Positions 1,794 to 62,114 are shown, counted from the stretch's first letter. The stretch: DNA of 64,000 nucleotides from Schmidtea polychroa (GCA_044892525.1 JBJFYX010000150.1:62001-126000), one strand, 5' to 3'. Translations and numbers: made by a program. The notes: a model not told the origin generated them from the letters alone.

Positions 1794-1796
1794 AAA

Positions 1797-4275: not shown

Positions 4276-4294
4276 GTCCAGACCACTAAGATGG

Positions 4295-5570: not shown

Positions 5571-5578
5571 AATTGTAT

Positions 5579-6139: not shown

Positions 6140-6170
6140 ATCATTAATTACCTTTAATTTATTGCTCCGA

Positions 6171-6631: not shown

Positions 6632-6632
<1 letters not shown>
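6422..6632 (-). repeat. 5' LTR of element B
   Basis: Direct repeat of 2846-3056. Confidence 0.95.
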
Positions 6633-11586: not shown

Positions 11587-12216
11587 TTGTATGCCTTAAC
11601 CAGGAACAAATTTGATAGTGGCATTTTAAAAACATTTAAAATCCAAAACTCTCTTAAATCTGACGGTTTTGTGGTTGATTTAAAAATGGTGTATAACATG
11701 GTGTATACATATAAGAAGAAACTCGGACACAACATTGAAACACTCACAGATGAGATGTGGCAAACATTTCTGTCTGATCTTAACCCTCTCCGTGTAAAAA
11801 ATAATGCTGATATTTATAGTGACCCGTTCTATTCCCACAAAAACCGTTACAAAATGTGCCTTCAGCTTCATCCCGATGGATTCAAAGCTAGAAAAGGGAC
11901 ACATCTTTCTGTTTTCTTTTTCATAATGCGCGGTGAAAACGATGTACTTTTGCAATGGCCTATGAAACTGGAAGGACATCTTGCTTTAATGTCGAATATA
12001 TTCGACAAATATACGGAGAGGGTTAATAAAAATAATGAATTCTTGTATAGCTTTTAAATCGATCCATTGAGAATTACCATAGCTAGCGATAAACTCTTAA
12101 CTAGAGCAAGAACAGCTGCAAATTGGTGCATTGATGGAACCTACAAATTGATAAATATGGGATTTCCTGTTGTTGTGACAGGATTTACGGATTTGTTGAA
12201 TAGGGTTTTCTGGTAA
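11587..12216 (+). pseudogene. MULE transposase-like frame containing a TRAF MATH segment
   Basis: ORF 11587-12057 continues in frame past TAA into IDPLRITIASDKLL..WCIDGTYKLINMGFPVVVTGFTD (MULE DDE first-Asp motif) and ends at a GTAAGT donor-like site at 12213. Confidence 0.7.
11812..11967 (+). pseudogene. TRAF: TRAF-type MATH domain fragment
   Basis: IYSDPFYSHKNRYKMCLQLHPDGFKARKGTHLSVFFFIMRGENDVLLQWPM matches the TRAF-C consensus (S.PFY..GYKMCL..G..GTHLS.F..IMRGEYD.LL.WPF). Confidence 0.85.
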
Positions 12217-15175: not shown

Positions 15176-16273
15176 TGGAGCTACTACTACCTACTAACTA
15201 TTTATACAAAAAGGCCGTTGAAATGAAAAAAGAGGATATAAAGAATATTGAAAACATGGATGAATATGCAAAACTAATAAATTCTTCTCAAGAACAATAG
15301 TAGCGGATTATGCTGAGTATATATGAAATGCTATTGAAAAATATGACAGCACTATAAAACGCATTAATTGCTGGTTACATACAAATAACAACATGATAAT
15401 GGAAAGACAATATATGAGGATGTTTCATTTCTTCAGGGTATTTTTGATGTGAGGTTTTTTAATAAAGGAGTTTCGTTACTTTTCAAAAGGTTGAACGAAA
15501 TTGATGATGTTCGTGATTTTTAGCAGCGTTTAAATACCGATATTTTGAAAATATGCGCATTAGACTGAATCATGTGCACCTTTTTCTCCTAATACAAACA
15601 ATGCTCTTAAAAGATTTAATCACACAATAAAATCATGGTATGTAAGACATGAAATGTCTTCAATGAAGAATTTTATCAAATTCTTTGGTTTAACTGTGTG
15701 TAGATTATGTTTAGACAGAGCTTTATAAGATACGTTCGAGTTATGTAAGGATATTCAGTTTCAGTTTCAATTTTTGTGTGAAATCGGTAATAGAGATGTC
15801 GTGATAGTCTCTGAACATTCTTTGGATTCCAGTGAAATTGACTTACTATGCTCTCAATACTTGAATTTGGATTTTAAGAAATTACGGGATTTGAAAGATT
15901 TTATATGTGTTTATTGTACCTAATAAATTAATAACTAGCTATTTGGATCTGTAATGCTCGTGTTTTGATTTCAATAAAATTAGAAGATGTAATCATATAT
16001 ATATATATATATAATTTTCTGAAAAGTATTAGTAAGTTGAATATCATTTGTGTTTCGATTGTTAAGAGGGGAAAACGAAAAGAAGACCAACTGCTAAAAT
16101 TGCAAATAGTTCGGCTCTGAATAAAACTACCAGACCATACGATATTTAAGTAAAGGTTTTTATAGTGTGTAGATTACAATTTGATTACTAATTTGATGTG
16201 TATAATTAAATGCAATTAGTAATATAGTGTTTATATTAGTAATATAGTATGTGGATTAGAAATATAGTGTGTA

Positions 16274-18002
16274 CACCAAACGCCACTGAGACCGTTTCCT
16301 ATAATAAAACAAGAAAATCAATAATTTTACATTATAGAAACATACATACTTACTTTGATTTCACGCTGATGTTCTCATTTATAGTGCAGTTAGATACATC
16401 TTATACTATAGAAATCTGAAAAGTGGAAGAAAAATTAAAAACTGCACACAAACCCAAGACATACTAAAAACACATACAAACTTTTGATTCATTGAAATGC
16501 ACAGCCGAGATACGTTACTACAATAATTCTATTTTAGACAATTTTTAGAAAAAAAAGATCGCTGAAAATATTTTAAAATATATTTTTATTGAAATTGTCA
16601 AGAGCAGATGAATTTGGTTCAATGTCTCTTCAATCCAGATTTGCTTTCCTGAAAGATGCCCTTCACGTTGAGCTCAGAAAAAAAATTACAGAAATTAAAA
16701 AAATTATTTTATTCATATTCGGCGATTTTTCCCAAAATGTTTTAGAAAAATACATATTTTTGGTAATTGATTTATTTAATTATAATTATAAACATATCTG
16801 ACTCACGTTGTTTCGAAATAATTCCAAAATACTTAAAAATAAATGTCATAAAATTCATAAAAAATCCCTGAAAATTAATTAAAAATAATTTATAATTATC
16901 CTGTTGATTAAAAGTAATATTTACGAACTTGAACAATGATCTCATATTTATATGGATCAAAATTCAAGTCTTAAAATTTACTTAAAATTTAACATCTTAC
17001 TTGAAAGTCATTTCTAAAATGACTAAAATAAATTTCCAAATAAATTTCAAATTCATGATGAATGATTAAATGTGATAATGAGTAAATGAACTGGTGAGAG
17101 AAATTGCTCTACACGCAAACCATCACTAGACCAAACACCACTGAGAATCATTTCCTATAATATAACAAAAAAATCAATAATCTTACATTATAGAAACATA
17201 CATACTTACTTTGATTTCATGTATGTTCTCATTTAGAGTGCAGTCAGATACATCTTATACTATAGAAATCTGAAAAGTGGAAGAAAAATTAAAAACTGCA
17301 CACAAACGCAACACATACGAAAAAACACATACAAACTTTTGATTCATCGAAATGCACCGCTGAGATACATTTCTATAATAATTTTATTTTAGACAATTTT
17401 TAGATAAAAAAAGATCGATGAAAAGTTTTAAAAATATATTTTTAATAAAATTTTCAAGAGCAGATGAATTTGGTTCAATGTCTTTTCAATCCATATTTGC
17501 TTTCCTGAAAGAAGCTTCTCATATTGAGCTCAGAAAAAAAAATAACAAAAAATTATTTTATTTTTATTATTCGACGATTTTTCCCAAAATGTTTTAGAAA
17601 GTCACATATTTTTGGTAATTCATTTATTTAATTATAATTTAAAACATATCTGACTCACATTTTTTCGAAAATATTCCAAACTGCTTGTCATAAAATATCA
17701 AAAATCCCTGAAAATTAATTAAAAATAATTTATAATTATGTTGACTAAAAGTAAAATTTAAGAACTTGAATGATCTCATATCTAAATGGATCAAAATTCA
17801 AGACTTTAAATTTACTTAAAATTAAATATCTTACCTGAAAGCCATTTCTAAAATGGCTAAAATAAATTTCCAAAAAACATTCATTATTGTAAGCAATTCA
17901 GTAAATTGATGATGATTAATTGGTAAATACAGCCAATTGGTGAGTGAATTGCTTTACACGCCAACTACCACTATAGAGAATGTATCTCAGTGGTGTTTGG
18001 TG
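16274..18002. mobile_element. Head-to-tail dimer of a TA-flanked MITE (TIR CACCAAACACCACTGAGA)
   Basis: Left TIR at 16274, second unit from about 17130, right TIR TCTCAGTGGTGTTTGGTG ending 18002; TA at both flanks; inserted in the 20-bp minisatellite. Confidence 0.85.
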
Positions 18003-20154
18003 TAGATTAGTAATATAGTATGTGGGTTAGTAATATAGTGTGTAGATTAGTTTTAGCCATTACACAACCATAAATTGTTTATGTGATAGACATAGTTAAC
18101 ATTAGAAATAGCGATGAGAATAATAATCGCAATTTCCGTGTCAATCAATAATTCCACAGCAATATATTTCAACTTTTACTGATATTACAATAATAACAAT
18201 AAAATTAATATAATATACTGATTTATTAGTACCACGCAAAATTATAAGTGATTTAAACTCAATTTTAAAGAGTACTGCTGGATATTTGAACCCAAGGGAT
18301 CATATCAATATCGGATCTTTTTAGTGAATTCTTAATAAACCTATAATGATTTTAATAGCCTCCAATATTAATCCTTAGAGTGGTTTTATCGGGTAATTGC
18401 TATCTAGTTTTAATGTTCATATTTCAATTCCAAATCGGCTTTTTCTTTATTTAATTTTTGTTATTTCGATTATTACATCACATTCAATTTGATTTGTTTG
18501 AATCATTAAACCTCAATTTTATGATGTTTATTTCATTTTCAACAAACTTTCTCTCTAGCAAAGTCAAAGTTTATTGAATTCATCTTTACAGATTTCAGAA
18601 AAATTTTTTTTGCTTGTTAGTTATTGATGGCGTTGACGTTTTTATGCATATATTTTTATTTAAATTATCTACATTATTAGTATTACATAAAATGTCATCA
18701 AAATTATTTATAAATTTAAAATTAAAATCAACATATATAGGTACGCCCTTAATCAATATATATTAATATAAAAGTATGACTTTATTTAAATTTTATTTAT
18801 CGATATACTACTTATATATTAAAAGTAATCTATTATCAAATAGATTGGAAATATTAAATTTATTGACAATTTTGCTTAATTTATAAATCATCCACATATA
18901 TTAATTATCGACATATTAATTATTGTTATATGTACGTCAGTAACTTTTGTTGATGTTGACAATATTATTACAGGGATATATCATTAAATCTAACTGTGTT
19001 ATACACTACTTTTAATTTTGCCATTATGTTATTGTTATTATTTTTCTTATTATTTTTATAACTTTTACAAATATATATTATTAAAACAAATCCTCAAATA
19101 AAGCTTGGGAAATTTTTAATGAATTTTAATGTTCTTAACTATTCTACATATTGCAATCATACATAATATAAAAATCACCATCACATTATTTAATAAACTA
19201 AACAAATTATGTGTGTCGATAATTAATCATTTTAATAAATTAATTAAATTATTAACAAAAAGGTTTAAAAAGATTTTTTTTGTAAACTTAAGTGCTTTGT
19301 AATTTGCTTTATAAATGTTTTATAAATTTAATTGCGTGATTATAAAAACTTGAGTACTCGACAATTTGTTTAATGGAGAGAAAATACCTTCTGTAGTATG
19401 CTAGCTTTATCTTGAAACAGACATATTGTTTTAAAAACTCAGTTTTTATTCAAATTTAAGAAATTTCAAATTTTTTCCAAATGCCACGTAGTCTTTCTTC
19501 CTTTCCACACATTCAGCTTTTGTTTGATTGTTTGATGAAGTTATTAATTACTTTTTATTATGTTGTTGATATTTTGAATATATGCAGAGCAAGGTAATTA
19601 CGATTTTGACCAACATTACAGAGACACTTCAGTGGCAGCTAGAATTTTACAATTAATTTCATAATAAATCACATTTTGTATGTTATCTTTGCATAAAACA
19701 CTCGCACACCTACAAAAAATATTTTAAATAAAGAATTATTAAATTATTTATTTTGCAATATGAAATTAATAAAAATCGCTGTATAAAATAATTAGATATT
19801 TTAATTTGTATACCACTAGAATAGTGTCTGCTAAAATGTGTGCCGTGAAATATTTAGGATAATTTAAATCTGTAATTGAAAAGATTTGCCAGCAAGAATC
19901 AAGATAAGAAAATTACAATGTATAAGACAAAGTACGTAAAATAATATAAGGATTTTTGTTATTACTACACTAAAGAATTTGTATATTTTTGTTTATATGA
20001 TAAGTTATATTTAAATTTTTTCGATATTTTTTATTTAGTGTGCCACAAAACAAAAGGCCGTTTCTTAGTGTGCAACGAAAGAAAGAAGTTTGACAGACAC
20101 TGCACTAGAACATACAAAATAACTGTAATTAATGTTAACCTGAAATTCAGACAG

Positions 20155-20188: not shown

Positions 20189-21409
20189 TTTAATAAATAA
20201 AATAATAAATTATGATATATAAATATTTATATAAATTTTTAGTTAAATACATATCACAAAGATATTTTACTCTAAGAAAATAATTGATACTGTCAGAAAT
20301 AATATTTTATATTTTCTTTAAAAATCTTTAATAAAATACTTTATTTTTAAAGTTTTCTCACTGAAAAAACTCATTTATAATTAAAACCTTTATAATTAAT
20401 TTATTTTCCATAACCATTTTTACTAATTTCGTGGAAATTGTAGGAAATCAAGAATAAGAAATTTTTTTACTCCATTTGAGCATCATTATAATCATTATTC
20501 AGTGAGAGACATAGAAGGGGATTTCTAATGAAATTGTAGAGAAAACAATTTACCAAAACAAACCCGTACCTACAGCTTATTAAACAATAGATCATATCTC
20601 CTTGATTTCTGTCAATAAATGTCGTTCAAAATCTGATGTAAGCACTCTTCAAATAAGACAACATCTCTGATAATTTGACAAGGAAGAAAAGATTTTACTA
20701 AATTTTTAATTAAACAAAATTTATTAAAACTGATTTTATTTAAAAATATAATATATAATTTGTTAAATAATCCGGATATGATAAATGTCAGTAGCAATAA
20801 ATTTGCAATTATTATTTTCTGAAGTCAAAAACATTTATTTCAATATATTATTGAATCCTCACTTTTCGCACAAATTAAGAGACTGCAATTTTCATATCAT
20901 CAAACAGAGTTGTGCCAAAAACATTCATAAAATTTCAGTAAAAAATTATAAAATAGTTTTGTTGAGGATACTTAAGTAATAAAATAAAATAATTATTGAA
21001 ATGTATATAATGATTAGAGTATATGGTTAGGGACCCGCTAACTCACATACCCCCCTCACCTCCCGAAAATTTTTTTTTAAATTATAATTTTTTAAGATAT
21101 TTTATACTTTTTTAATATTTTCAACAGTTTTCAAGGGTTTTCAAGGGTTTTCTCGAAACGTGTCGCAAATTATTAAAAGTGATTGAGAAGTGAGGTTTTA
21201 TCACGTAAATGTCCAGTGAAAAAGAACCGCTAAATCGATAAACGAATTAGTTTAAAATTGTCCGAGTCAATGGTGAAAATATTTATTTTCCGGTGAAAAT
21301 TTACCAACAGTTTGATGATGCGCATTATTTGTTTTTTGCATAATTATAATGATGAAACGAATCAACTGTCAAAATAGATCGATGATATTGCGCAACACAT
21401 GTTAGGACC

Positions 21410-23125
21410 ATGCTGAAAATTTTTGGTAAAAGTCCTCAGTGCTTAGTAGAATTACTCCATATAACATTCACTAGCACTGGGGCAGAAATCAATGAGTTCT
21501 ATCTTGCTTATCAATTATTTAACTATTTTGCAGGAAACATTGATATGTCACAGGATCTTCGAATCGCAATATGGGAAAGTATCGGCACCAACTTTAGGAA
21601 CATCAGTTTAAACACTTTCAAATATGCCGATAAAATGGTCTTCGGAAGTTTCATCATAGGAGACCTTGTCCATGAACAGCACGTGGATTTCCTAAACGCG
21701 TTCGAAGCGGCCATAGAAATATGGCTGCTAAAAGTAACTAATAATCAAAATTACCTATCTAATTATAAAAATGTTTTCAAAAATAATACTGCTAATAATA
21801 TTTCTTATAAAGATAAAATTAAAAAAACACCCTTTGATAAAAATTATAAAAAAGACTCTCAAAGTATCAAATATATATCCTTTCTTAATAATAATCTTAA
21901 TATTAAATATTATAATGATTTTTTCATAAATGATTTTAATAATGTAAAATTTAATAATTTAAAACTTAATAATACTAAACTTAATAATAATGTAAAACTT
22001 AATATTGTAGAACCTAATAATGTAAAAATGAATAATGAAAAGCCTAATAACGTGAAATTTAATTATAAAAAGAGAAAAAGAAAAATTAACAAAATCAAAA
22101 ATAGAAAAATTAAAATATTTAAAGAAAATTTAAGGGAAAATTTGTTTAAATTTTCACCAAATTTCAGATCTGATGACCATGCTGAAAATTTTTTTCGTCC
22201 TCCTTCGGAGGACGAAAAGAATAATATACGCAGCTCGCCGGCCCGAGGCCGGCTCCCGGAAAATGTTGGCAGGAGACCTAAGAATAATACAATAACTCTA
22301 ATAAATCCACCTTATTCTATACCAAAACCGACCGTCAAAATTTGGAAACCAAAAACCTCAAACTATATTAACCTACCTAGACCCCACTACTCTAGTCCTA
22401 TACCAATAAAACCTATTAATACTCTAGATAATATGCATTTCGATTTATTATCTGCTAGGTACGATGTTGAAGTCCAAACAGATGACAATTCTAGATCTAA
22501 TACCGAATTACCGAGCGATGAACCTAATAATACAAACGAAGAAGATAATCTATTTATCATGAACACTGATCCACCAACAACCGAAAATTCAAAAAACTAT
22601 ACATCACTGAATGCCCATAATGTCAATATTATGGACGACAGCATTACTAAAACAAAACCGGATACTGAAAAACAGCCTACTAAAACTGCCAACAAAGAAG
22701 ATAATCTATTTATCATGAATACTTCTCTACCAACAGCCCAATTTCAAAACCACTCTACAACACTGAATGCCCACTATATAAATCTTATTGATGACAGTAT
22801 TATTGAAAAGAAGATGACAGATATTGAGAAACAACCTGATTCATATCCAGATTCAGAGTCATTCTCTGATTCTGATCCAGATTCCGAGTCTAGCTCTGAT
22901 ACTGATTCATACCCAGATTCTGACTCAATTTCTGAGTATGATCGAAATTATGCTTCCGTTCGTGTCTACATCACTGAATGCACATACACAGATTCAGACC
23001 CTCTTAACATCTGCAGCTCCGATTCCATTTCCGATCCTCCCTGTGATTCAGACTCCGATAATATCTCCAATTCAGATTCTACTTCCGAATCGTCCTATGA
23101 TGCAGACTGCAACTTGGATTTATAA
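21410..23125 (+). CDS. 571-aa orphan protein (conserved N-terminal domain, Asn/Lys-rich linker, ~52-aa duplication, Ser/Asp-rich tail)
   Basis: Intact ORF; first ~110 aa roughly 80% identical to the copy-2 translation, with visible synonymous changes (e.g. TTA CTC vs TTG CTT). Confidence 0.7.
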   Translation: MLKIFGKSPQCLVELLHITFTSTGAEINEFYLAYQLFNYFAGNIDMSQDLRIAIWESIGTNFRNISLNTFKYADKMVFGSFIIGDLVHEQHVDFLNAFEAAIEIWLLKVTNNQNYLSNYKNVFKNNTANNISYKDKIKKTPFDKNYKKDSQSIKYISFLNNNLNIKYYNDFFINDFNNVKFNNLKLNNTKLNNNVKLNIVEPNNVKMNNEKPNNVKFNYKKRKRKINKIKNRKIKIFKENLRENLFKFSPNFRSDDHAENFFRPPSEDEKNNIRSSPARGRLPENVGRRPKNNTITLINPPYSIPKPTVKIWKPKTSNYINLPRPHYSSPIPIKPINTLDNMHFDLLSARYDVEVQTDDNSRSNTELPSDEPNNTNEEDNLFIMNTDPPTTENSKNYTSLNAHNVNIMDDSITKTKPDTEKQPTKTANKEDNLFIMNTSLPTAQFQNHSTTLNAHYINLIDDSIIEKKMTDIEKQPDSYPDSESFSDSDPDSESSSDTDSYPDSDSISEYDRNYASVRVYITECTYTDSDPLNICSSDSISDPPCDSDSDNISNSDSTSESSYDADCNLDL

Positions 23126-23339
23126 GCTCAGCTATGTATCACGGTGAAATATCTTCAACATTTTTTATATATACCCTTATTTATATTTAATTTCTCATAT
23201 TTATATATATATATATGTGTATGTATGTATATATGTATGTATGTATATATACCCTTTATTTATATCTAACCTTCATATCACCATTATAAAACTATATTCT
23301 TTAAAAGCTTAATTATAATTAATTTAACTATATCTATAA

Positions 23340-24060
23340 ATTGAATTAATTGATATTTGTTTAAATTACTAATTATCTTGGAATTTGAAATTTTCAAATA
23401 TCTCAATTTAAATAATTTTACTATCATTATATACTAGATATAAAAAATACCCTTATCTATAATTTCCTATTATAAAATTATATTCATTAAAATTTAATTA
23501 ATTTGACTATATCTATACTTTAATCTCTTAAGGTTTGAATTAACTTGGATTTTGGTTTAATTTTAATTTAACTATATATATTCATCTTTTGAATACTAAC
23601 TATATTTAAAATTTATTGTATACATTATCCTATCTATATTTAATTAAATTTTATAATAAAATACTTTTTGAATTAAATAGGTAATAAAATACATTTTGAA
23701 TTTAATTGACACTTGTTTAAATTTTTTATAAATTATATGTACCCCTATCTATATTTATATTCATTAAAATTTAATTAATTTGACTATATCTATACCTTAA
23801 TCTCTTAAGGTATGAATTAACTTGGATTTTGGTTAACTATATATATATTCATCTTTTGAATACTAACTATATTTAAAATTTTATTGTATACATAATCCTA
23901 TCTATATTTAATTTAATTAAATAATTTTATAATAAAATACTTTTTGAATTAAATTGGTAATAAAATACATTTCGAATTTAATTGACAATTGTTTAAATTA
24001 CTAGTTATTTTGGAAATTGAGATTTTCAAATATCTCAATCTAAATAATTTAACTAAGTTA
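23340..24060. repeat. AT-rich internal tandem duplication (~280-bp unit)
   Basis: About 23475-23720 repeated at about 23755-24000; 23345-23425 repeated near 23980-24060. Confidence 0.8.
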
Positions 24061-24598
24061 CAATATATATGTATATATATTAAATACCCTCATTTATATT
24101 CGCTAATTTATATTCCTAATATTTAAATTAACTTTGATTTTTGAGTAAATTTTAATTTGACTATATATACTTATCATACTCCTCTTATGAATATTAACTA
24201 ATCTTAATTTAAAATTGCATTATCTCTCTAACTATAAATCTATACAACATCCTTCCTATATTTACTTTAATTGATATTAAACTACATTTAGAAATAAATT
24301 GATATGATTATCTGAATTATTCTGTTTCTTAAAAACATTCATAGCACTGACCGGAATGGGAAAACCCTATATCTATATACAATATATTTACTTATAATCT
24401 ACAGCAAATATAACCTGAATGAATCCAACCACATCCTTTGATGAATAAACCTGACAGAAGCCTTAACAAGCCTCTCCCAACAGCTACTACAGAACCTGAC
24501 CGAAGCCGCAACAATACTAAAACATCACCCGACAAACCTCCCACGTCCCACATAGGACTCAGATTGCAACTAAACTATCTGACATATTATCCGTGTAT

Positions 24599-24683
24599 AT
24601 TATCAGTGTAGGTCAATGTAGGAGCCCCTGTAGCGGCTCCGCCTCACTGATAATTCCTTTTTTTTTTTTTTTTTTTTTTTTTT
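24599..24683 (+). other. Conserved stem-loop followed by T26
   Basis: Outer stem ATTATCAGTG/CACTGATAAT, inner GGAGCC/GGCTCC; homolog at 59161-59216. Confidence 0.85.
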
Positions 24684-24857
24684 CAATTTTTTAGTTCTTA
24701 GTTTGTTGTATAATTATAACCACCTATCTTTAATAATACCTCTTCCTTTGACCTATCTTTCTAATACTTAATATAATATAATGTATAATATTTGACCACA
24801 AATGGAGTCTTCCAACTCCGCCCTACTTAATTAACTTTTAGTGCTCCTAACCACATA

Positions 24858-25606
24858 GAAGCCTCTCCTACTGAACCTGACAGAAGCCCTAACAAGCCTC
24901 TCCTACTGAACCTGACAGAAGCCTTAACAAGCCTCTCCTACTGAACCTGACAGAAGCCTTAACAATACTAAACCTGACAGAAGCCTAACAATACTAAAGC
25001 CTTAACAATACTGAACCTGACAGAAGCCTTAACAATACTGAACCTGACAGAAGCCTTAACAAGCCTCTCCTACCGAACCTGACAGAAGCCTTAACAAGCC
25101 TCTCCTACTGAACCTGACAGAAGCCTTAACAAGCCTCTCCTACTGAACCTGACAGAAGCCTTAACAAGCCTCTCCTACTGAACCTGACAGAAGCCTTAAC
25201 AATACTAAACCTGACAGAAGCCTAACAATACTAAAGCCTTAACAATACTGAACCTGACAGAAGCCTTAACAATACTGAACCTGACAGAAGCCTTAACAAG
25301 CCTCTCCTACCGAACCTGACAGAAGCCTTAACAGGCCTCTCCTACTGAACCTGACAGAAGCCTTAACAAACCTCTCCTACTGATCCTGACAGAAGCCCTA
25401 ACAAACCTCTCCTACTGATCCTGAAGCCTAACAATACTAAACCTGACAGAAGCCCTAACAATACTGAACCTGACAGAAGCCTAACAATACTAAACCTGAC
25501 AGAAGCCTTAACAATACTGAACCTGACAGAAGCCTTAACAATACTGAACCTGACAGAAGCCTTAACAATTCTGAACCTGACAGAAGCCTTAACAAGCCTC
25601 TCCTAA
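24858..25606 (+). repeat. Minisatellite of 35-bp and 27-bp units with a higher-order repeat
   Basis: Units aagcctctcctactgaacctgacagaagccttaac and aatactgaacctgacagaagccttaac; block at 24964 repeated at 25201. Confidence 0.95.
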
Positions 25607-28600
25607 CAATTCCTAACATCAACAACTAATACCGAAACCTGACAGAACTCTTACAGAACGTTTAATGTAGGAGTATTACACTCCAGCATCTATTGTTTAT
25701 CCAAATAAAAGCTTCAGATTACATAAGGGTGAGAATCGATCTCCCCTTCTTGGCCAGGAGGCCCGAGAAATTTAATAAAATAAAATTTGATTTTTTTTTT
25801 TTCTAAATTTATCATTGTGCATTTATTTTATCGGGGTTTTGTGACTTATATAATACAGTACAGATAAAATTTTGTCAACAAACAGTCTTCCGTTTACTTA
25901 TACAATTGAAATTTCTGTGTTTATGCATTGACATTTTGATGTGCTAAGGCATATACGCATGAATTAAAACGTGCCAATCCAATTAGTCCATGCGCCATTG
26001 GGTGGATTCAATCAGCAATAAGTTTTTATTACAATTATTATTAAAGTTTTTATTAAGAATAATATTATTATTTTTAAATTATTAAGACTTTTGTTATGAA
26101 TTACAGAATTATCGAAAATTATTATTATTTTTAAAAAATTATTATTATTATTATTTTAAAATATTTAACAATACCATATAGGAGATATTTAGGCCATTTT
26201 GAGTATTTTTAGTTAATTTATATACATCAGTATTATCTGACATTTTGAGGTATCAATATATACAACAAATCAATAAAATAAAGACCATTTGGGTAGCATA
26301 TTGTAATTTATATATTCTAATATTGTAAAACTGGTTCTAAGAGTAAACATAAATCTAAATTATTGTGCAATTACATTCATTACAACCTAATAAACCTAAA
26401 ACGATATAATTTCACAGTAACTATTATTGACTCATAGCTAAATACTGACTATTTCCTTTGAAACATTGATATTTACCAATAAGAAAATTGTCAATTTAAA
26501 TAGATATATTCAAAACATTTCCACCTTAACCGATCCCTCACCAAATATTTCTACCCCTTTAAACATTCAACCGACTATATCCCTTTACAAATCCTATATC
26601 TCCATCTTAACCGAACCGTTACTAAATCCAACCGACTATATCCCTTAATTCCACCAACTTGAGCCCTTTAACATATCAATTCTCATAAAATCCATAGACA
26701 ATTATTCAAAATATGAATTTTATTTAATTGTTACAGACATCAAACATTTTTTCATTGAAATAATTTAGTAGCTAAATTCATGTAGTAAGAGCTCACTAAA
26801 AGATCAAAATTCACTAAAATCAATATTTTCTACAAATATTTCACCCCATTTACCATCAAATACCTAACTAGGGATGATAATTTCTCATTGATTGATCATA
26901 ATTTTTCATCGATTCTTGAAAATGATGCACAAATTAAGCTTTATAAATATTCAAGTAAATAATAATGAAATGTGGAAAATAAAATAATAANNNNNNNNNN
27001 NNNNNNNNNNNNNNNNNNNNNNNNNNNNNNNNNNNNNNNNNNNNNNNNNNNNNNNNNNNNNNNNNNNNNNNNNNNNNNNNNNNNNNNNNNNNNNNNNNNN
27101 NNNNNNNNNNNNNNNNNNNNNGTAACCAGTACTTTTGTGAGCAATACCCATAAAGGGACAAAATATCTTGTCGGATAAACTCAGAATATATATAATAAAA
27201 CTATAAAAAAAATAATAATTATAAAAATTGAGTTGACCTACATATTTTAAAAATATTTTCTAAGTATTTGAGTTGACCTAAATAATCTTTGAGTTGACCT
27301 ACATATTTTTGAGTTGACCTACTTAATTTTTTAAAGACGTTTTTGAGTTGACTTACATAAAAACTATAGAATATTTTGAGAAAAAATCTTGAAAACCCTT
27401 GAAAATTGTAAAAAATTATAAACTTTCTGAGTAAAACCCTTGAAAAATATAACATTTTTAAGAAAATCCTTGAAAACCCTTGAAACCCGTTAAAAATCAT
27501 AAAAAATTATAAAAATTTATAAAACATTATAAATTTTTGAGTCGACCTACATAATTTTTATAAAAAAAATTTCGGGGGGGGGGTATGTGAATTTGCGGGT
27601 CCCTAACCATCTACTGATTAGGGAAAAATACAAAAAAATAAGGGGAATTATGTTTTAGATTGCTGAAAAAATAGTGAGTAAAAAAATTGAAAATAAGAAG
27701 TGAATAACAATAATCAATAAAATAAAACAATAAAATATTACAAGGTCATACAGCATATAAAGGAAAACTAAAATAGAAAATCAATTAGAAATAGAATTTC
27801 CTTATCTCGCCTTTAAAAGGAAACACAATTTGAATCAAAAGACACAATTTGTAAAGGAGGAAAAGGAAACAGAATTTGAAAAGAAAAAAAAAGAAAACAG
27901 AATTAAAAACAAAATGCAAAGTGAAGTATGAAATTACTGGAGAAAACAATGTCAAATCGAAGAAGCAAAATAAAACCAAATAAAGTTATCAGTCGGGAGT
28001 ATCAATTTATTTTAAATTAAAGCCATGACAGCCACTAAATTGAAATATTCAAGTAGTTTGGAATTCCAAGTTGTATTGTAAACGTGATAATCTGCTCAAA
28101 GAATTGCTAATAGCATTCAAGTCGTTGTAATATTGGATGATTATTGTCGCTGATAATCATTTGCATTAAACAATAAAAGTTTATATTATCTAGAATTCGA
28201 TATTTTTGTTAAACAAGGCATGCTTTGGAGTCAGATCAATAATTGTTAATTTCATATTCCACTTACGACCAAAGAATTTTAAAAAATTTGTAAAACACTT
28301 TTGTATAATTTGTTTATTTTACAACTTGATTTTTATTTGTTAATAAAAGTTTTCCATCTTTTCCCATTAAACATTTTTAAATTTTTTATTTTTTCTTTTA
28401 AATTACCAAACTTTTCAACTTTATAAGGTTTTAATATTTTAAATACTGAAATTTCGTTTTTAAAATTCTTTCATCTTAATATTTCCAATTATCGTATCGA
28501 CTTCCTTATCTTTGAACAAATAGCTTTTTTCGGTTACCATTTCAAATAAACAGGTTTTTATTTAAAAATTATACAATTATACAATATTATTCTTGAGAAC

Positions 28601-30117: not shown

Positions 30118-31570
30118 TACCTAAATCCAAAATATAAAAGTCTCTAAAATCTAAAAAAAATCGATAAAATTATAGTATAGGAACACACAAACTTACTTGT
30201 GTGTAAAAACATAATTTTCCGAAAGTTACACCAAACACCGCTGAGAACCGTTTCCCATAATATAACAAAGAAATCAATAATCTTCTTTTATAGAAACATA
30301 CATACTTACTTTGATTTCACGCTGATGTTCTCATTTATAGTGCAGTGTACATCTTGTACTATAGAAATCTAAAAAGTGGAAGAAAAATTAAAAACTGCAC
30401 ACATGCAAAATATATACTAAAAGACACATACAAACTTTTGATTCATAGAAATGCACAGCTGAGATACGTTTCTATAATAACTTTATTTAAGACAATTTTT
30501 ATAAAAAAAAGATCACTGTAAATTTTTTAAAATATATTTTTAATGAAATTACCAAGAGCAGATGAATTTGGTTAAATGTCTTCAATCCAAATTGATCTCA
30601 GAAAACAATTACAAAAATTAAAAAAGTTATTTTATTCATATTCGGCGATTTTTCCCAAAATGTTTTAGAAAAATTCATATTTTTGGTGATTGATTTATTT
30701 ATTAAATTAAAATTAAAATATATTTGACTCACATTTTTTCGAAATAATTCCAAAATACTTTAAGATAAATGTCATAAAATTCCTAAAAAAAACCCTGAAA
30801 ATTAATTAAAAATAATTTATAATTATACTGTTGATTAAAAGTAATATTTAAGAACTTCAATAATGATGGATCAAAATTCAAGTCTTAAAATTTACTTAAA
30901 ATTTAATATCTTACCTGAAAGCTATTTGTAAAATGGCTAAAATAAATTTACAAAATATGATGAGAAATCATGAAAAATTCATTAAATTGGTGTGTGAGCA
31001 ATTTCTCTACACGCCAACCACCGCTATAGAGAATGTATCTCAGTAGTGTTTGGTGTAAAGGTTTTATATAAGAATTGAAAAAGTGACAGAAAAATAATTT
31101 TACATACAAACACAGCACACATAATATAAATACATGAAATTTTTTATTGCCTTTTTTATTCCGAAAGTTTAAAGTAATTAACTTATTGTTAACATGTCAT
31201 TATTTTTAATATATCAAAAAATCATGGGGGAAAAAACTTTAGATTTTGATTTGAACAACTCTACTTTGAGCTTTCGAGAAAAGACGACAAAACATCGTAA
31301 GATCTATTTATAAAGTATTTTTGAAGTTAATATTTCTTTAGATTTTCAGATATTTCTCTGGAAACGCTACCTTTTTGCGAAGGTTAAAGAATTTTTTCAT
31401 TTAATTACAAATAATTAAAATATTTTACAGTACATCAGATATTTCTTGTCAAACGACTTTGTGTGAAGGTAGCATTTCTAATATTCAACAAAGTCCATCT
31501 ACATCCTTGGATTTGCAGAAAAAAATTCGAAAATCGTATATTTTAATAACTTGTTTAATAAAAATAATAT
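30118..31570 (+). mobile_element. Partial copy of the TA-flanked CACCTAAATC element, interrupted by a MITE
   Basis: 30118-30226 and 31058-31570 are the reverse complement of about 63407-63300 and 63300-62600; right end approximate. Confidence 0.75.
30229..31055. mobile_element. TA-flanked MITE (827 bp), same family as 16274-18002
   Basis: TIR CACCAAACACCGCTGAGA / TCTCAGTAGTGTTTGGTG; TA duplication supported by the empty site near 63295 (minus strand GAAAGT-TA-AAAGTG). Confidence 0.9.
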
Positions 31571-31632
31571 TTTCAAAATAATATTTTCAAAATAATATTT
31601 TCAAAATAATATTTTACAAAAAATAATATTTT
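31561..31632. repeat. Short tandem repeat (aaaataatattttc)n
   Basis: About five consecutive 14-bp units. Confidence 0.85.
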
Positions 31633-57374: not shown

Positions 57375-59160
57375 TTAAATTAAACAATATTCGGAGTTCA
57401 TAAAAATAAATTTACAGTTTTTACTTGTTCATCACGATGAAATGGAATCTAAAAGTATTACTATATTATATTAAGGTAAGGATTGCACCAGACGTAAAAT
57501 TTGACCTAATAATTTGTAACTTGGAGAATAATTTAAACTAACCTATTTGACCTTAAAATGTCCTACTTTCATGGTTGCTATGATAACCACGTGGTTTTCA
57601 TGGTAATAAATAATTTACTTAACTGACCAATATAGAAAACATTTCGACTTCTTTTTTAATGGTTGTCACATATATCTGACACAAACATATCTATAATGCG
57701 ACTGTAATATTTTCAAATAGTGGGTTAGGTGTGTAGAAAATGTTTTGTTACATTCGCGTCCCACTAACAACTACACATAATTATTTTAATTGGCCACAAG
57801 CGACGTTGGTACTGTGATTTAACGGGGGCTGTCAGCAAAAGGTGAGTCCTTTCACCAGGACTGCTAATGACCTGGCGAGACTCTGGGTTCATGGGCTACC
57901 ATAGAAGGTATTGTGTTCCATTTTCTCTTGTTTCTTCATCCTTTTGATTTATTCAATTTCTTAGATGTCGCCATCGACCTCGAATTTCTATGTTTAAAAC
58001 TTTTACTGAAAATGAGTTTCAAAGAGTTAGAAAATACGAGTTTATCTTATTAATGTTTTGTCTCAAATCATTTGCGATAAGGTTACCATATTATATTAGA
58101 GTTGTTCACATTACACAAATATTGTATACAAAGTTGTTATTAATTTATAATCAATTAAATTTCATTTTTAGGTTTCTAAATGTTCTAAGTAGTGTTTCTT
58201 CTCGAGAATTTCCCGAGAATTTTTTTTTTAAAAATTGTAATGTTTTTTTTATATTTTTTCGAGCAAATTATTTTAACCGCATCAGTTCGGCATGTCTGGG
58301 ATTTTATGTCTCTATTAAACATTCCATTTTCTTCGAATACAGATATTGGAAGATATCGAGTGCACATGCGTTACTGGTGCTATTAAATAACTGTTTGTGT
58401 GTCTGCATGTAAGTGAGCGAGCGAGAAAGAAAGAACGCACGCATGCGTCACTATTTATTATAAAAAAAATCAAATTTTATTTCATGTAAATCCATCTGGC
58501 ATAAAGCCGAAGGGGAGAACGGTTCTCACCCTTATGTAATCTACAGCTTTTATTCTTTTAGTCTTCGGATGCTAGAGTTAATAACTCCCGCATCAAACGC
58601 GGTTTTCCCTGAAAACTTCAGTCAGGTTTGGTATCAGATAATCCTTTCTGAAGCTCCTGGCATTGGCTCATTCATATTTTATCTCATTGAGGTTGTTTTT
58701 TTTCCCGGTAAGCATCGTTGAGCATAGTAGGGGATAAACATGGCTAAGCATAAACATGATCAGTCATGGCCCATATAGATGCAACGGACATTCATTCAAA
58801 GGTTAGTTCTTTCGGATTGATTAGGAGAGGCTGAGCAACTCAAGATGAGTTTAGGTTTCCGCCGGATCCAAGTGGATTCTGAAGTAGTTCAAGCATATCT
58901 GGACGGATTTCCCAGTTTTAGCAGATGGAGTAGCAATGGTAAGGAGAGGCTGTTCAAGCTTCTGTCTGATTAGTTTAAATGAGGTTATGGGCTCTAAAAA
59001 ACGGAATTTAATAATTCGGAGTAAGAAGACTCCATTTGTGATTTTTGTAGCGGTCAAATATTATACATTATATTATAGTAAAGATTGGAAGGAATGGTGT
59101 AAAGGAAGAGGAGGTTTTATGAATAGGTTGTTATATTAGATATATAAACAACTTAAAGGT

Positions 59161-59216
59161 ATTATCAGTGAGGCGGAGCCCCTACAAGGACTCCTATATT
59201 GACCCACTGATAATAT
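59161..59216 (-). other. Conserved stem-loop just downstream of the stop codon
   Basis: ATTATCAGTG..GGAGTCC-TTGTA-GGGCTCC..CACTGATAAT; homolog of 24599-24654. Confidence 0.85.
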
Positions 59217-59224
59217 ACATACGC

Positions 59225-60524
59225 TTAGTTGCGTTTTCTTTTCTTCTTTCTAATATTACAATTCTTTAGTTCAGGTATTCGATTCGTCATTTTATTTTTT
59301 AGTTTTTCGGTTATTCTTTTTCTCTGTTGAATGAAGGATTCATATACACACTTAACCGTGTGAGATGTTAGGTAGGTATCATATTTTAGAGCTCTTACGC
59401 TATAGTTAGTAAGAAAGATTTCGAAGAAAAAATTTCTGTATTCTTTTTCTTTTTTGTTATCATCATCAGGCATACTTTTTTTGCCATTCCTTAACTTCCG
59501 AATAGCAATACTTCGCATTTCAATGCTGTCTTCAAGGAAATTGGAATAAATCGCATTATAAGTTTCTTCGGTTTGATATTTACAATATTCGAAGTTAGAT
59601 AGGTCATCAATAGTGCCAAGGATTTCGAAGAACACATTCATAAGTGTCTTGTTTTCAATTTTCTTTTTATCAATCGTATTTGGTTTAGGTAATATTTTGA
59701 AATTAATTTTTAGGTATGGTAATTGTTCAGATTTTTTGACCATATTGGACTCACCTCTGAAGGTCAAATCAGGTCTCAGCTTCTTTATGTCAGACAGTTT
59801 ATTAAATATAAATAGTTCAGTAATGTCTGGAAGATATTTACCGTAGGTTAGCTCGGATATATTCTTAGTACATTGAATCTCATAGAAACCATTCATCAAT
59901 TCTTTCTCCTCATAGTATTCGTCATTATTACGTTTCTTCGGAATTTGTTTATCATTAAAAGGTTTTTCAATTTTTGGCATTGGTTCAAGTTTCTTGACGT
60001 TTTTAAGCTTGTTAATAAGGGTCAGATTATCTTCTCTTTCTCTTGATAGTTTCATATAGTATTCCACGTCAAGGTCTGTCATTCCGTAATCGGTTGGGTA
60101 TTCGTTGTCATTTGTAAGTGTACAGCCAAAAAAGTAATTAATATCTTCTTTACTGTAGTCGAGTTGGGTCTGAAGATCGTCTGAGTTGAGATAAGAAATG
60201 GAATCAGAATTAGGAACAGAATCAGAATTAAGATCAGAATCTGAATTAAGATCAGAATCCAAGTTGGGATCAGAATCAGAATTAAGATCAGAATTAGAAT
60301 TAAAATCGGAAACAGAATTCTGATCGGCATCAGAATTTGGATCGTAATCAGAATTTGAATCGGAATCAGAATTTGGATCATTATGAGTAATACATTCATC
60401 AATATCATTTTTAGTTTCAATTATACTATCATCAATAAGATTGATATTATAAGCAGTCGGCGATTTAGGGGATTTTGGAATTTGGGCTATTGGTAGATCA
60501 ATATTCAGGTTTATTTGGTTATCC
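59225..60524 (-). CDS. C-terminal part of the element protein: Ser/Asp tract plus ~300-aa unknown domain ending in a basic NLS-like tail
   Basis: Frame is open from 60524 (NLIDDSII, shared with copy 1) through the track ORF 59225-60262 to RKKKRKRN*; joined to upstream parts only via frameshifts. Confidence 0.6.
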
Positions 60525-61088
60525 TTTTTTTACTTTGGTATTAGCCAAGATTGGTATTATCGGGATTCGTCGGGTTATTTTTAATAATGTTAAATGGTTT
60601 GGGAATTATTTGGGCAGTATCAATATTAGGTTCTTTAATTAGTTCTTCGTCATCTTTTTTGACTTTATCATCATTCTTAGTGTTTGTTAATAAGTATTCA
60701 AAACGCATATTATACTTAATCTTAAATTTTTTACGTTTAAAAATTTCGAGGTCAGATATTTTATCTTTTACGACAGAGTTATTGATTTTTATATATTTAG
60801 ATATTAAAAATAGTTCATATCATATTATACTTAATTTTATGTTTTCTACGTTTAAAGATTTCTAGGTTAATAATTGGTTTTAGTGGAATAGGATTAGAGT
60901 AGTGGGCTCTTGGTAGGTTAATATAGATTGAATTTTTTGGTTCCCAAATTTTGACGGTCGGTTTTGGTATGGAGTAAGGAGGATTGATAGGGTAATTTCT
61001 CATTTGAGTTAATTCCTTTATCTTACATCTCTTGCTAACATTTTTCGTGAGTCGGCCGGAGGCCGAAGAGCTGCGTTTGCTCAAAAAT

Positions 61089-61964
61089 TTAATATCCAAT
61101 GTAACATTTGCTGGGAGCCGGCTTCGGCCGGCGAGATGTGTATATTATCCTTTTCATCCTCCGAAGGAGGACGAAAAAATTTTTAGCATGGTCATCGGAT
61201 CTGAAATTTGGTGGAAATATAAACAATTTATCCCTTAAATTTTCTTTGAATTTTTTAATTTTTCTATTTTTAATTTTTCTCTTTTTATAATTAAGTTTCA
61301 CGTTATTAAGTTTTACGTTATTAAATTTTACTTTATTAAATTTTACGTTAAAATCATTTATGAAAAAGTCATTAAAATAAATAATATTAAGATTATTTTC
61401 AAAAAATGATATATTTTTAATTCTCCGAGTATCTTTTTTACATTTTTTATAAATATTTTTATCAAAAGGATAATTTTTATTTTCATTAATTTTACTTTTA
61501 TCGTCATTACGTATACTTTTAGCATTAGAATTTACATTAGTAGTTTTATTTTTAGAATCCTTATAAGATTTATTATTAATAATTTTATTTTTAAAAGCAT
61601 TTTTAAAATCATTTGATAGGTAATTCTGATTATTAATTACTTTTAACTGCCATATTTCTATAGCCGCTCCAAACGCATTTAGGAAGTCAACGTGTTGTTC
61701 ACGGACTAAGTTTCTTATGATGAAGCTTCCAAAGATAAGTTTATCGGCATATTTGTAAGTGTTTAAACTTATGTTCCTAATGTTGATGCCAATATTTTCC
61801 CAAATTGCGATTCGGAGATCCTTCGACATTACAATGGTTCCTGAAAAATAGTTAAGAAGCTAAAAAGCAATAAAAAACTCATTGATTTCTGCCCCAGTGC
61901 TAGCGAATGTTATATGAAGCAATTCTACTAAGCTCTGAGGAATTTTACCAAATATTTTTAGCAT
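61089..61964 (-). pseudogene. N-terminal part of the element protein, one stop, then a frameshift
   Basis: MLKIFGKIPQSLVELLHITFASTGAEINEFFIAF*LLNYFSGTIVMSKDLRIAIWENIG.. homologous to 21410; PPYSIPKP block continues in 60815-61099. Confidence 0.8.
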
Positions 61965-62114
61965 GGTCATCGAATCACGTGTCAAGGGCAAACAAATGAC
62001 AACAATTTCTTTTTCACACTGTACTTGCACTATGGAAGACAGTGGTACTTGCACTTTCAACAAGACAGGTGCGTGTATCCTCAGCAATAAAATTTTGCAA
62101 CCTCTCATCGTATA

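What the first reader, a model, noticed from the sequence alone, without database searches (positions are those of the whole stretch)
21407..25802. Unclassified dispersed element: orphan ORF, conserved hairpins and fixed termini, with no recognisable mobility enzyme
Seen: two copies 33 kb apart in opposite orientation share the same start (GACCATGCT at the ATG), a conserved ~110-aa N-terminal domain with synonymous substitutions, a PPYSIPKPTVKIW block, a Ser/Asp tract, three structured modules and the same end AAATAAAATTTGA(T)n. I see no RT, integrase, DDE, YR or HUH motif, no LTR, no TIR and no TSD. Inference: a non-autonomous or accessory-gene unit of an undescribed retro- or ssDNA-type element; DIRS/YR-like, Penelope-like and rolling-circle partners are all possible.
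Basis: partly seen in the sequence, partly recalled or inferred. Interest (0 to 1): 0.8.

Follow-up and report, generated by a model that had tools for sequence, protein, structure and literature searches.

The report
Orphan-gene repeat unit with conserved hairpins
Two old, diverged copies of a 3.5-4.4 kb unit with sharply defined ends carry a protein gene with no known relatives and conserved RNA-type hairpins. It is most likely an unclassified non-autonomous mobile element, but with only two copies available neither mobility nor mechanism can be shown.

Summary
Copy 1 (21406-25802, +) and copy 2 (61968-58462, -) share a start at GACCATGCT, an N-terminal domain under purifying selection (91/115 aa, dN/dS 0.23), the PPYSIPKPTVKIW block, three hairpin modules and the end AAATAAAATTTGA(T)n.

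Homology stops at both ends. A power test shows that homologous flanks at synonymous-site divergence would have been detected. No TSD, TIR, subTIR, LTR, split direct repeat, ribozyme or enzyme remnant was found.

New points:
- The 5' terminal ~27-29 nt recur ~770 nt inside the ORF in both copies.
- Copy 2's reading frame is broken, but it carries an extra triple-repeat C-terminal domain that copy 1 lacks.
- The 3' end looks like a poly(A) signal plus a U-rich downstream element.
- The proteins have no relatives in Pfam, PDB, a 5.8-billion-cluster word search or an exhaustive HMMER scan of 1.84 billion representatives.

Best reading (about 0.4): a lineage-restricted, gag/ORF1-only type non-autonomous retroposon copied through its sense RNA. 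Rivals are an orphan host-gene pair (0.25) and a DNA-level unit of Helentron or tyrosine-recombinase type (0.2). The source genome could not be searched, so copy number, the decisive datum, is missing. Interest is moderate.

The parts
21406..25802 (+). Copy 1, whole unit (4397 nt). Weak homology to copy 2 may start at 21395.
   Evidence: Homology to copy 2 starts at 21406 and ends after the T-run. Flanks are unrelated.
21395..21424 (+). 5' terminus of copy 1: CANNTG motif (21396-21401), GACC, ATG. Repeat A1 is 21396-21424.
21410..23125 (+). Intact ORF of 571 aa. No Pfam, PDB or database relatives. Order of parts: helical N-domain, N/K-rich basic stretch, PPYS block, 2x ~50-aa repeat, Ser/Asp tail.
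   Evidence: An open frame of 571 codons at 26% GC cannot be chance.
21410..21754 (+). Conserved N-terminal domain (115 aa), predicted all-helical at low confidence.
   Evidence: 91/115 aa identical to copy 2, dN/dS 0.23. AF2 pLDDT 47. One spurious hit among 1.84 billion representatives.
22165..22193 (+). Repeat A2: internal copy of the 5' terminus, inside the ORF.
   Evidence: The 15-mer GACCATGCTGAAAAT is exact at 21406 and 22175. The match is 29 nt at 86%.
22188..22253 (+). Module 1: 14-bp hairpin with UUCG loop (22188-22222) and a GC hairpin (22237-22253), both within the ORF.
   Evidence: I12
22301..22429 (+). Conserved PPYSIPKPTVKIW block (contains a PPxY motif).
   Evidence: 34/43 aa identical, dN/dS 0.25
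22836..23122 (+). Ser/Asp-rich acidic tail of the ORF.
23126..24590 (+). AT-rich (17% GC in its main part), T-rich non-coding stretch with internal duplications. It has no counterpart in copy 2 and may be foreign DNA.
24594..24904 (+). Module 2: nested hairpin 24603-24650, a T26 run 24658-24683, a 24-nt block identical to copy 2, and a GGAGU...ACUCC hairpin.
24859..25605 (+). Tandem array of 35/27-nt units (CCTGACAGAAGCC... motif; higher-order period 237). Only about 1-3 units are present in copy 2.
25626..25802 (+). Module 3 and 3' terminus: hairpins at 25663-25692, 25725-25748 and 25752-25763, then AAATAAAATTTGA and T12 (25778-25802).
58462..61968 (-). Copy 2, whole unit (3507 nt). Weak homology may start at 61982, with a CANNTG motif at 61976-61981.
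59225..61964 (-). Copy 2 coding region, broken: one stop in the N-domain, two frame changes and a stop-rich stretch of about 330 nt. Its 3' part is a 434-codon open frame.
59228..60130 (-). Copy 2-only C-terminal domain made of three ~60-90-aa repeats. No relatives found.
   Evidence: AF2 pLDDT 36.
61175..61201 (-). Copy 2 repeat A2. A1 is 61950-61976.
   Evidence: 27 nt, 93%
61103..61226 (-). Copy 2 module 1. The GC hairpin part is duplicated relative to copy 1.
58942..59219 (-). Copy 2 module 2.
58462..58637 (-). Copy 2 module 3 and 3' terminus (AAATAAAATTTGA + T8).

Best explanation
The two sequences are old members of a lineage-restricted repeat family whose unit is a self-contained, promoter-proximal transcription unit.

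Layout of the unit:
- A leader of about 10 nt with a CANNTG motif.
- An ORF that starts 4 nt after the conserved boundary. It encodes an orphan protein with a helical N-domain, a basic K/R/N-rich stretch, a PPxY block and an acidic Ser/Asp tail.
- A long, G-poor 3' region with three blocks of conserved stem-loops.
- A fixed terminus, AAUAAA-UUUGA-U(n).

I propose that it works like a gag/ORF1-only non-autonomous retroposon. The sense transcript would be the copied intermediate. Its own protein would coat or escort it. The conserved 3' stem-loops, several of which share GGAG...CUCC stems, and the conserved termini would be the cis-signals read by a reverse transcriptase or integration machinery supplied in trans by an autonomous element elsewhere in the genome.

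Shown: discrete ends, unrelated flanks, purifying selection on two protein blocks, conserved hairpins, absence of any enzyme, and modular variation between copies.

Inferred: transcription, the RNA intermediate, trans-mobilisation, and the roles of the protein and hairpins.
For: Discrete unit:
- Homology starts and stops at the same positions in both copies.
- The 600-nt flanks align no better than random window segments: 19/300 and 247/300 controls score at least as high.
- Simulated homologous flanks at synonymous-site divergence (34% substitutions, up to 6% indels) exceeded a score of 40 (the highest control score) in at least 95% of trials.
- Neighbouring genes are not duplicated.

Termini are the best-conserved non-coding parts: 18 nt are identical at the 3' end, and the 15-mer at the 5' end has one difference.

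Coding under selection:
- dN/dS is 0.23 (0.11-0.46) for the N-domain and 0.25 for the PPYS block.
- Open frames of 571 and 434 codons occur in 26% GC DNA.

Structures:
- Of 55 predicted pairs, none is broken. Six one-sided changes all keep pairing as G.U on the sense strand, and one change is compensatory.
- Summed consensus energy is -69.8 kcal/mol for the sense strand against -60.5 for the antisense strand.
- Hairpin z-scores run from -2.3 to -5.9.

Other points:
- The sense strand is A-rich with C>G in every part of both copies. From general knowledge, this is usual for retroelement sense strands.
- Between the conserved cis-modules the copies differ in blocks: a tandem array that varies in unit number, an extra domain, and an AT-rich insert. 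This is as in subfamilies of non-autonomous elements.
- The surrounding region is TE-rich.
Against: - Only two copies, about 23% diverged and both within 64 kb, so nothing shows dispersal or recent activity.
- There is no poly(A) or microsatellite tail and no target-site duplication.
- The unit ends in a T-run on the sense strand. Together with AATAAA this looks like a poly(A) signal plus a U-rich downstream element. The neighbouring RING ORF has a similar AAATAAATTTTGTTTT just after its stop codon. An RNA copy should not contain the part downstream of the cleavage site.
- No partner element sharing the 3' module lies in the window.
- The strand preference of the hairpins is mild, and in copy 1 alone it is absent.
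- The protein has no likeness to any known gag or ORF1 family.
Confidence: 0.4

Rival explanations
1. An orphan, intronless host gene that was duplicated locally in inverted orientation. Only the functional transcript region would still be recognisably conserved: the coding sequence, a structured regulatory 3' UTR, and the poly(A) signal with its U-rich downstream element. Copy 2 would be decaying or restructured.
For: - The two copies lie 33 kb apart and no other fragment is in the window.
- The boundaries coincide with a start codon (plus about 10 nt) and with AATAAA followed by a T-run. This resembles the 3' end of the neighbouring RING ORF.
- dN/dS is below 1.
- No hallmark of any transposon class is present.
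- The hairpins fit an RNA-level regulatory role.
Against: - Flanks, including any promoter, are not homologous, although the test had the power to see neutral-level homology.
- A DNA duplication whose two breakpoints coincide with the ends of the transcript is unlikely.
- Non-coding modules and the extreme termini are more conserved than synonymous sites: 74-80% identity against pS 0.30-0.34. That is unusual for the UTRs of paralogues.
- The 3' region is 2.7 kb with a variable tandem array.
- The repeat of the 5' terminus inside the ORF is left unexplained.
Confidence: 0.25
2. A non-autonomous DNA-level mobile unit moved by a rolling-circle (Helentron/HLE2-like) or tyrosine-recombinase (Crypton- or DIRS-like) enzyme encoded elsewhere. 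The hairpins would act on single-stranded DNA, and the T-string would be part of the terminus or of a T-rich target.
For: - No TSD.
- Palindromes lie within a few tens of nt of the 3' end.
- A string of T at the boundary differs in number between copies (12 versus 8).
- A central tandem array makes up much of one copy.
- Helentron-associated HINE/DINE-1 elements are described with exactly these traits: T-rich/TT targets, boundary T strings that vary in number, 3' palindromes, and tandem repeats making up to about 50% of the length (PMC4067079; PMC11417382).
- The unit includes sequence that would lie downstream of the RNA cleavage site, which fits copying as DNA.
Against: - The defining 12-16-nt (sub)terminal inverted repeats are absent. 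The 5' end does not match the reverse complement of the 3' end better than chance, and no antisense match to the 5' 15-mer exists with up to 2 mismatches.
- There is no 5' TC or 3' CTRR.
- There are no ITR/ICR or split direct repeats.
- One-sided changes in stems give G.U pairs on the sense strand, and there is strong sense-strand compositional asymmetry. Both are more typical of RNA-level constraint.
Confidence: 0.2
3. The two copies are the long, diverged inverted arms of one large (~40.5 kb, 21406-61968) composite element or inverted duplication.
For: The copies are convergent, with their 5' ends outward.
Against: - There is no TSD outside the arms.
- The interior holds unrelated repeats, a hAT-like pseudogene and a RING ORF, but no genes of a large-element type.
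- The arms differ in length and content.
- 77% identity would make it very old.
Confidence: 0.05

Closest known systems
Gag/ORF1-only non-LTR retroposons (HeT-A of Drosophila telomeres; HAL1 of mammals). This comparison comes from general knowledge and was not tested by sequence.
   Same: One ORF for a non-enzymatic protein, a long 3' non-coding region with repeats, an A-rich sense strand, no reverse transcriptase of its own, and dependence on an enzyme in trans.
   Different: Those elements end in oligo(A), are often 5'-truncated, and in the case of HAL1 have TSDs. Their proteins belong to recognisable Gag/ORF1 families. Here the unit ends in a T-run, has no TSD, and its protein has no relatives.
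Helentron-associated non-autonomous elements (HINE / DINE-1; HLE2 group)
   Same: No TSD, 3' palindromes, boundary strings of T that vary between copies, insertion next to T, and a large internal tandem array (PMC4067079; PMC11417382).
   Different: The 12-16-nt (sub)terminal inverted repeats that define the group are absent. HINEs are non-coding. Stem changes and strand composition point to RNA-level constraint.
Tyrosine-recombinase retroelements and their non-autonomous derivatives (DIRS1, Ngaro/PAT/VIPER; SIRE)
   Same: No TSD, no poly(A) tail, and a terminal sequence repeated internally. A Gag-like ORF without recognisable domains is usual in these elements (PMC6681497).
   Different: The required architecture (A1 ... 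B1-A2-B2, or ITRs plus an internal complementary region) is not present. A2 lies 770 nt from the 5' end, no B repeat is detectable, and there are no ITRs.
Penelope-like elements / metazoan retrozymes
   Same: Structured RNA motifs in non-coding parts, and no classical LTR or poly(A).
   Different: No hammerhead or other ribozyme was found even at E<=10. There are no pLTR-type terminal repeats.

Membership tests
Helitron (HLE1) | 5' TC and 3' CTRR ends, with a hairpin about 11 nt before the 3' end, inserted between A and T | tested here: not met
   The ends read (ACACRTG..)GACCATG and ..AAATTTGA(T)n in both copies, and no CTRR follows the last hairpin. Definition from PMC11417382.
Helentron / Helitron2 (HLE2) and HINE/DINE-1 | 12-16-nt terminal or subterminal inverted repeats | tested here: not met
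   The 5' 50 nt against the reverse complement of the 3' 170 nt score 8 and 7, against control means of 7.7 and 7.5. There is no antisense match to the 5' 15-mer with up to 2 mismatches.
Helentron / Helitron2 (HLE2) and HINE/DINE-1 | 3' stem-loop, T-T insertion site with a variable T string at the boundary, no TSD | tested here: inconclusive
   The 3' hairpins and a T12/T8 run are present and there is no TSD. The 5' boundary is preceded by G in copy 1 and T in copy 2, and no empty site is available.
DIRS1-like | Inverted terminal repeats plus an internal complementary region | tested here: not met
   Only AT-rich chance inverted matches and local hairpins were found.
Ngaro / PAT / VIPER-like | Split direct repeats: A1 at the 5' end and B1-A2-B2 at the 3' end | tested here: not met
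   A1/A2 exist (27-29 nt), but A2 lies 3.6 kb from the 3' end. B1 against B2 is not above chance: 22% and 73% of controls score at least as high. Definition from PMC6681497.
DIRS / Ngaro / Crypton (any YR element) | Tyrosine recombinase, and RT/RNase H for the retro forms, encoded by autonomous members sharing the termini | not testable with these tools
   No such domain occurs in either copy. The source genome cannot be searched for partners.
Penelope-like elements / retrozymes | Hammerhead ribozyme in terminal repeats; RT with GIY-YIG in autonomous members | tested here: not met
   Rfam found no ribozyme at the gathering threshold in the window, nor at E<=10 in either copy. No RT or GIY-YIG was found.
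Non-LTR retroposon (LINE-dependent, ORF1-only) | 3' poly(A) or microsatellite tail, and a variable TSD | tested here: not met
   The sense strand ends in a T-run, and no direct repeat is shared by the flanks of both copies.
Non-LTR retroposon (LINE-dependent, ORF1-only) | 3' stem-loop shared with an autonomous LINE partner | not testable with these tools
   Conserved 3' stem-loops exist, but there is no partner in the window and no access to the genome.
LTR retrotransposon derivatives (TRIM/LARD) | Long terminal direct repeats | tested here: not met
   No direct repeat joins the two ends. For contrast, the neighbouring gypsy element shows a 211-bp pair at 98.6% identity.
TIR DNA transposons / MITEs | Terminal inverted repeats and a fixed-length TSD | tested here: not met
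Segmental duplication of a host locus | Homology continuing into the flanks or to neighbouring genes | tested here: not met
   Flank scores are within the control range. The test had power of at least 95% at synonymous-site divergence. Neighbouring genes are single-copy in the window.

The most novel reading that the evidence does not exclude
This could be a previously undescribed kind of non-autonomous element with the following properties:
- It carries its own orphan RNA-binding or escort protein.
- Its ends are defined without TSD, TIR, LTR or A-tail.
- Its 5' terminus is kept in a second, internal copy next to a very stable UUCG hairpin, as a second start or recognition site, or as a template for regenerating the end.
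- It integrates next to T-runs by a recombinase-like or U-tail-primed route.
Probability: 0.12. Interest if true: 0.7.

Novelty: new variant of a known kind. Interest (0 to 1): 0.4.

Why it matters
If genome-wide data show that the family is mobile, it would add a protein-coding non-autonomous element whose end structure fits none of the standard classes. It would also provide an orphan protein and a set of hairpins that could serve as handles for finding its unknown autonomous partner.

If instead it is a local gene pair, it is an ordinary lineage-specific orphan with an unusually constrained 3' UTR. Either way it is a useful reminder that 'unknown' repeats in AT-rich genomes can hide coding units under selection.

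Tried and rejected
- **Ciliate code.** Reading the window with TAA/TAG as Gln does not join the broken gypsy or hAT frames, so the standard code holds.
- **Ribozymes and known RNAs.** Rfam gave nothing at the gathering threshold, and only AT-repeat 'miRNA' noise at E<=10. No tRNA genes were found.
- **Protein relatives.**
  - Pfam, PHROGs and PDB, by sequence and by profile: nothing.
  - Word-indexed search of the 571-aa ORF and of copy 2's C-terminal domain: nothing.
  - Exhaustive HMMER of the N-domain: one hit, which proved to be a bacterial Ig-repeat protein matching through its repeats, so it is spurious.
- **Structure.** Single-sequence AF2 models had pLDDT 47 and 36, too poor for a fold search, which I therefore did not run.
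- **Other copies.**
  - Exact-protein look-ups found no record (one search was not sent).
  - The metagenome scans gave no relative by peptide patterns, and the 7 loci found by an 18-nt motif were chance matches.
  - The viral-contig scans found nothing.
  - A literature search for four conserved strings hit only an unrelated leech piwi primer.
- **Organism.** The gypsy integrase finds only unnamed metagenome proteins at 51% identity or less, so the host remains unidentified. It is an AT-rich genome using the standard code, with a TRAF-type MATH exon.
- **Programmed frameshift at the U-run and hairpin.** Both alternative frames close after a few codons, so I dropped this.
- **G/A covariation between the terminal and internal repeats.** About 0.4-0.8 coincident sites are expected by chance, so it is not significant.
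- **Circle-junction reading of the internal repeat (3' end joined to 5' end).** The B part is only about 9 nt of AT-rich sequence and is not above chance.
- **Long-range pairing of the 5' AUGCUR with YAGCAU in module 3.** It is only 6 bp, and the variable base is already explained by the local hairpin.
- **The ~170-bp inverted repeat pair around copy 1** (21018-21158 / 27456-27615). It has no counterpart at copy 2, so it is not part of the family.

Full report
**1. Setting**

The window has 25-27% GC, uses the standard genetic code and is poor in genes. It contains:
- Ty3/gypsy sequences at 43-6632 (protease, RT, RNase H, integrase, CCHC gag).
- A hAT-like DUF4371 pseudogene at 41.5-43.4 kb.
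- A TRAF-type MATH exon at 11587-12057.
- An intronless RING-finger ORF at 54209-55741.

No tRNA or Rfam family is present. Seven N-runs were left untouched. The organism could not be named. The gypsy integrase finds only unnamed metagenome proteins at 51% identity or less, and the window's ORFs looked up by exact sequence are not on record.

**2.

blastn of the region against the window finds one other copy, inverted, at 61968-58462. Identity is 77% over the first 860 nt, and further co-linear blocks run to the 3' end. Both copies start at GACCATGCT, with the ATG 4 nt in. Both end with the identical 18-mer AAATAAAATTTGATTTTT, with 12 and 8 T in all.

Between the ends, these parts are conserved:
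- The first 115 codons (91 aa identical).
- The block INPPYSIPKPTVKIW... (34/43 aa).
- Three non-coding or dual-use modules containing stem-loops.

The remainder differs in blocks:
- Copy 1 has a 1.4-kb stretch of 17% GC with internal duplications, and a 750-bp array of 35/27-nt units.
- In the position of that AT-rich stretch, copy 2 has a further 300-aa coding domain built from three diverged repeats.

**3. Is it a discrete unit?**

- The 600 nt on either side of the two copies align no better than random segments of the same window. 19 of 300 controls (upstream) and 247 of 300 (downstream) score at least as high as the real pair. A 185-nt internal non-coding piece scores 57.
- I mutated the real flanks in silico to the divergence seen at synonymous sites (34%), with up to 6% indel events. 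In at least 95% of trials such flanks exceeded a score of 40, the highest control score. Only at 45% divergence or more would homology be lost.
- The neighbouring RING, MATH and hAT sequences are single-copy in the window.

So the duplicated entity is the unit itself. Weak similarity does extend 11-14 nt upstream of GACC (ACACATG-TT--AG against ACACGTGATTCGAT) and includes a CANNTG motif in both copies.

**4. Coding capacity**

Copy 1 has an intact 571-codon ORF (21410-23125). At this base composition about 9% of random codons are stops, so the frame has been kept by selection.
- dN/dS between the copies is 0.23 for the N-domain (bootstrap 0.11-0.46) and 0.25 for the PPYS block.
- The protein has, in order: a probably all-helical N-domain (low-confidence model), an Asn/Lys-rich stretch with a KKRKRK... 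run, a PPxY-containing block, a 2x ~50-aa repeat and a Ser/Asp tail.

Copy 2's homologous frame is broken. It has one stop in the N-domain, two frame changes and a stop-rich stretch of about 330 nt. Its 3' part is nevertheless a 434-codon open frame, so that part was functional until recently or still is.

Neither protein has relatives in any search:
- Pfam, PHROGs and PDB, by sequence and by profile.
- The 5.8-billion-cluster word search.
- The exhaustive HMMER scan of 1.84 billion representatives. Its single hit is a repeat artefact.
- Metagenome or viral contigs.

No stop-free segment of 55 aa or more, on either strand of either copy, matches an enzyme family.

**5. Structured modules**

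Module 1 lies inside the ORF. It has a 14-bp hairpin closed by UUCG, then a GC hairpin that is duplicated in copy 2. Module 2 has a nested hairpin of about 48 nt. In copy 1 it is followed by T26, a 24-nt block identical between the copies, and a GGAGU...ACUCC hairpin. Module 3 has three hairpins just before the terminus.

- Of 55 consensus pairs, none is broken. Six changed on one side and all remain G.U pairs on the sense strand. One pair changed on both sides.
- Folding the antisense strand gives interrupted helices and a weaker summed consensus energy (-60.5 against -69.8 kcal/mol).
- For single sequences the strand preference is clear only in copy 2. With two sequences this is suggestive, not proof, of a sense-RNA structure.
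- The sense strand is A-rich with C>G in every segment of both copies.

**6. A new feature**

The 5' terminal 27-29 nt recur about 770 nt downstream, inside the ORF and immediately before the UUCG hairpin, in both copies. The positions are 21396-24 and 22165-93 in copy 1, and 61976-50 and 61201-175 in copy 2.

- An exact 15-19-mer repeat in a 4-kb sequence, retained in both copies, is not chance: 0.59 matches are expected in the whole window even when 2 mismatches are allowed.
- I tested whether it is the A-repeat of split direct repeats. The sequence before the internal copy does not resemble the 3' end above chance.
- The single G/A difference that the two repeats share within each copy is not statistically meaningful.
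- The function of the repeat is unexplained.

**7. Class tests**

Each class with defining cis-features fails at least one of them:
- Helitron: no TC...CTRR ends.
- Helentron/HLE2: no (sub)TIRs.
- DIRS: no ITR/ICR.
- Ngaro/PAT/VIPER: no split direct repeats.
- Penelope/retrozyme: no hammerhead.
- LINE-type: no tail and no TSD.
- LTR type.
- TIR type.

The closest resemblances are functional, not genealogical:
- (a) Gag-only non-LTR retroposons such as HeT-A, from general knowledge.
- (b) Helentron-associated HINEs. These share the missing TSD, 3' palindromes, boundary T-strings of variable length and large internal tandem arrays (PMC4067079).
- (c) YR retroelements, which also lack a TSD and an A-tail and repeat their termini internally (PMC6681497).

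**8. Weighing**

For a mobile, RNA-copied unit:
- Discrete ends with unrelated flanks.
- Termini and cis-modules more conserved than synonymous sites.
- Block-wise variation between conserved modules.
- Sense-strand signals.
- An intronless orphan ORF in a TE-rich region.

Against it:
- Only two old, neighbouring copies.
- No tail and no TSD.
- The terminus AATAAA-TTTGA-T(n) looks like a complete polyadenylation site including its downstream U-rich element. The RING gene has a similar sequence directly after its stop codon. An RNA copy should lack the part beyond the cleavage site.

That last point favours either DNA-level copying or plain conservation of a host gene's functional region. However, the host-gene reading needs a duplication whose breakpoints coincide with the transcript's ends and which lost its promoter.

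My estimates are 0.40 for a non-autonomous retroposon-like unit, 0.25 for a host orphan-gene pair, 0.20 for a DNA-level non-autonomous unit and 0.05 for arms of a large inverted structure. The remainder is unassigned.

**9. Verdict**

The finding is real and correctly described. Its interpretation as a non-autonomous unit of an undescribed element is plausible but unproven. The specific partner classes suggested are not supported by any defining feature. The decisive datum, copy number and insertion-site structure in the source genome, could not be obtained with the collections at hand. Interest is moderate (0.4). Unknown repeats are common, but this one combines a selected orphan protein, conserved hairpins, an internally repeated 5' terminus and an end structure that fits no class.

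Noticed in passing
window 2846-6632 (- strand) and 43-1659 (- strand): A 211-bp direct repeat pair (2846-3056 / 6422-6632, 98.6% identical) brackets protease-RT-RNase H-integrase ORFs with frame breaks but no gag. CCHC-gag-like ORFs lie just outside at 43-1659 on the same strand. This is either two adjacent gypsy copies or an unusual arrangement.
   Followed up: partly
window 21018-21158 and 27456-27615: A ~170-bp repeat (70-81% identical, containing the (TTTTCAAGGG)n motif) lies in inverted orientation on either side of copy 1, enclosing 6.6 kb. Copy 2 has no counterpart. It may be two insertions of a small repeat, or the ends of another element.
   Followed up: partly
window 16272-18004, 30227-31575, 62181-63436: A repeat family has three or more copies at 73-85% identity. 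The copy next to copy 2 is bounded by a 35-bp inverted repeat (62113-62147 / 63375-63409, 94%), which suggests a TIR-type DNA transposon about 145 bp from copy 2's 5' end.
   Followed up: partly
window 41551-43386 (- strand): A hAT-like transposase pseudogene (DUF4371 plus hAT dimerisation domain, split by at least one stop) lies next to two N-runs.
   Followed up: partly
window 54209-55741 (- strand): An intronless 510-aa ORF has an N-terminal C3HC4 RING finger and an otherwise unmatched body. AAATAAATTTTGTTTT follows its stop codon directly. No exact record was found in the protein collection.
   Followed up: partly
window 11587-12057 (+ strand): An isolated TRAF/meprin-type MATH domain exon points to an animal-like host.
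   Followed up: no
window 8213-8553 / 47051-47385 and 47046-47867 / 49120-50019: Two further repeat pairs (78% inverted and 73% direct) of unknown type.
   Followed up: no
window 24603-24650, 24795-24815, 25668-25687 (copy 1): Three separate hairpins in the 3' region share GGAG...CUCC stems, and module 1 has the mirror form CCUCC-UUCG-GGAGG. This could be a repeated protein-binding motif.
   Followed up: no
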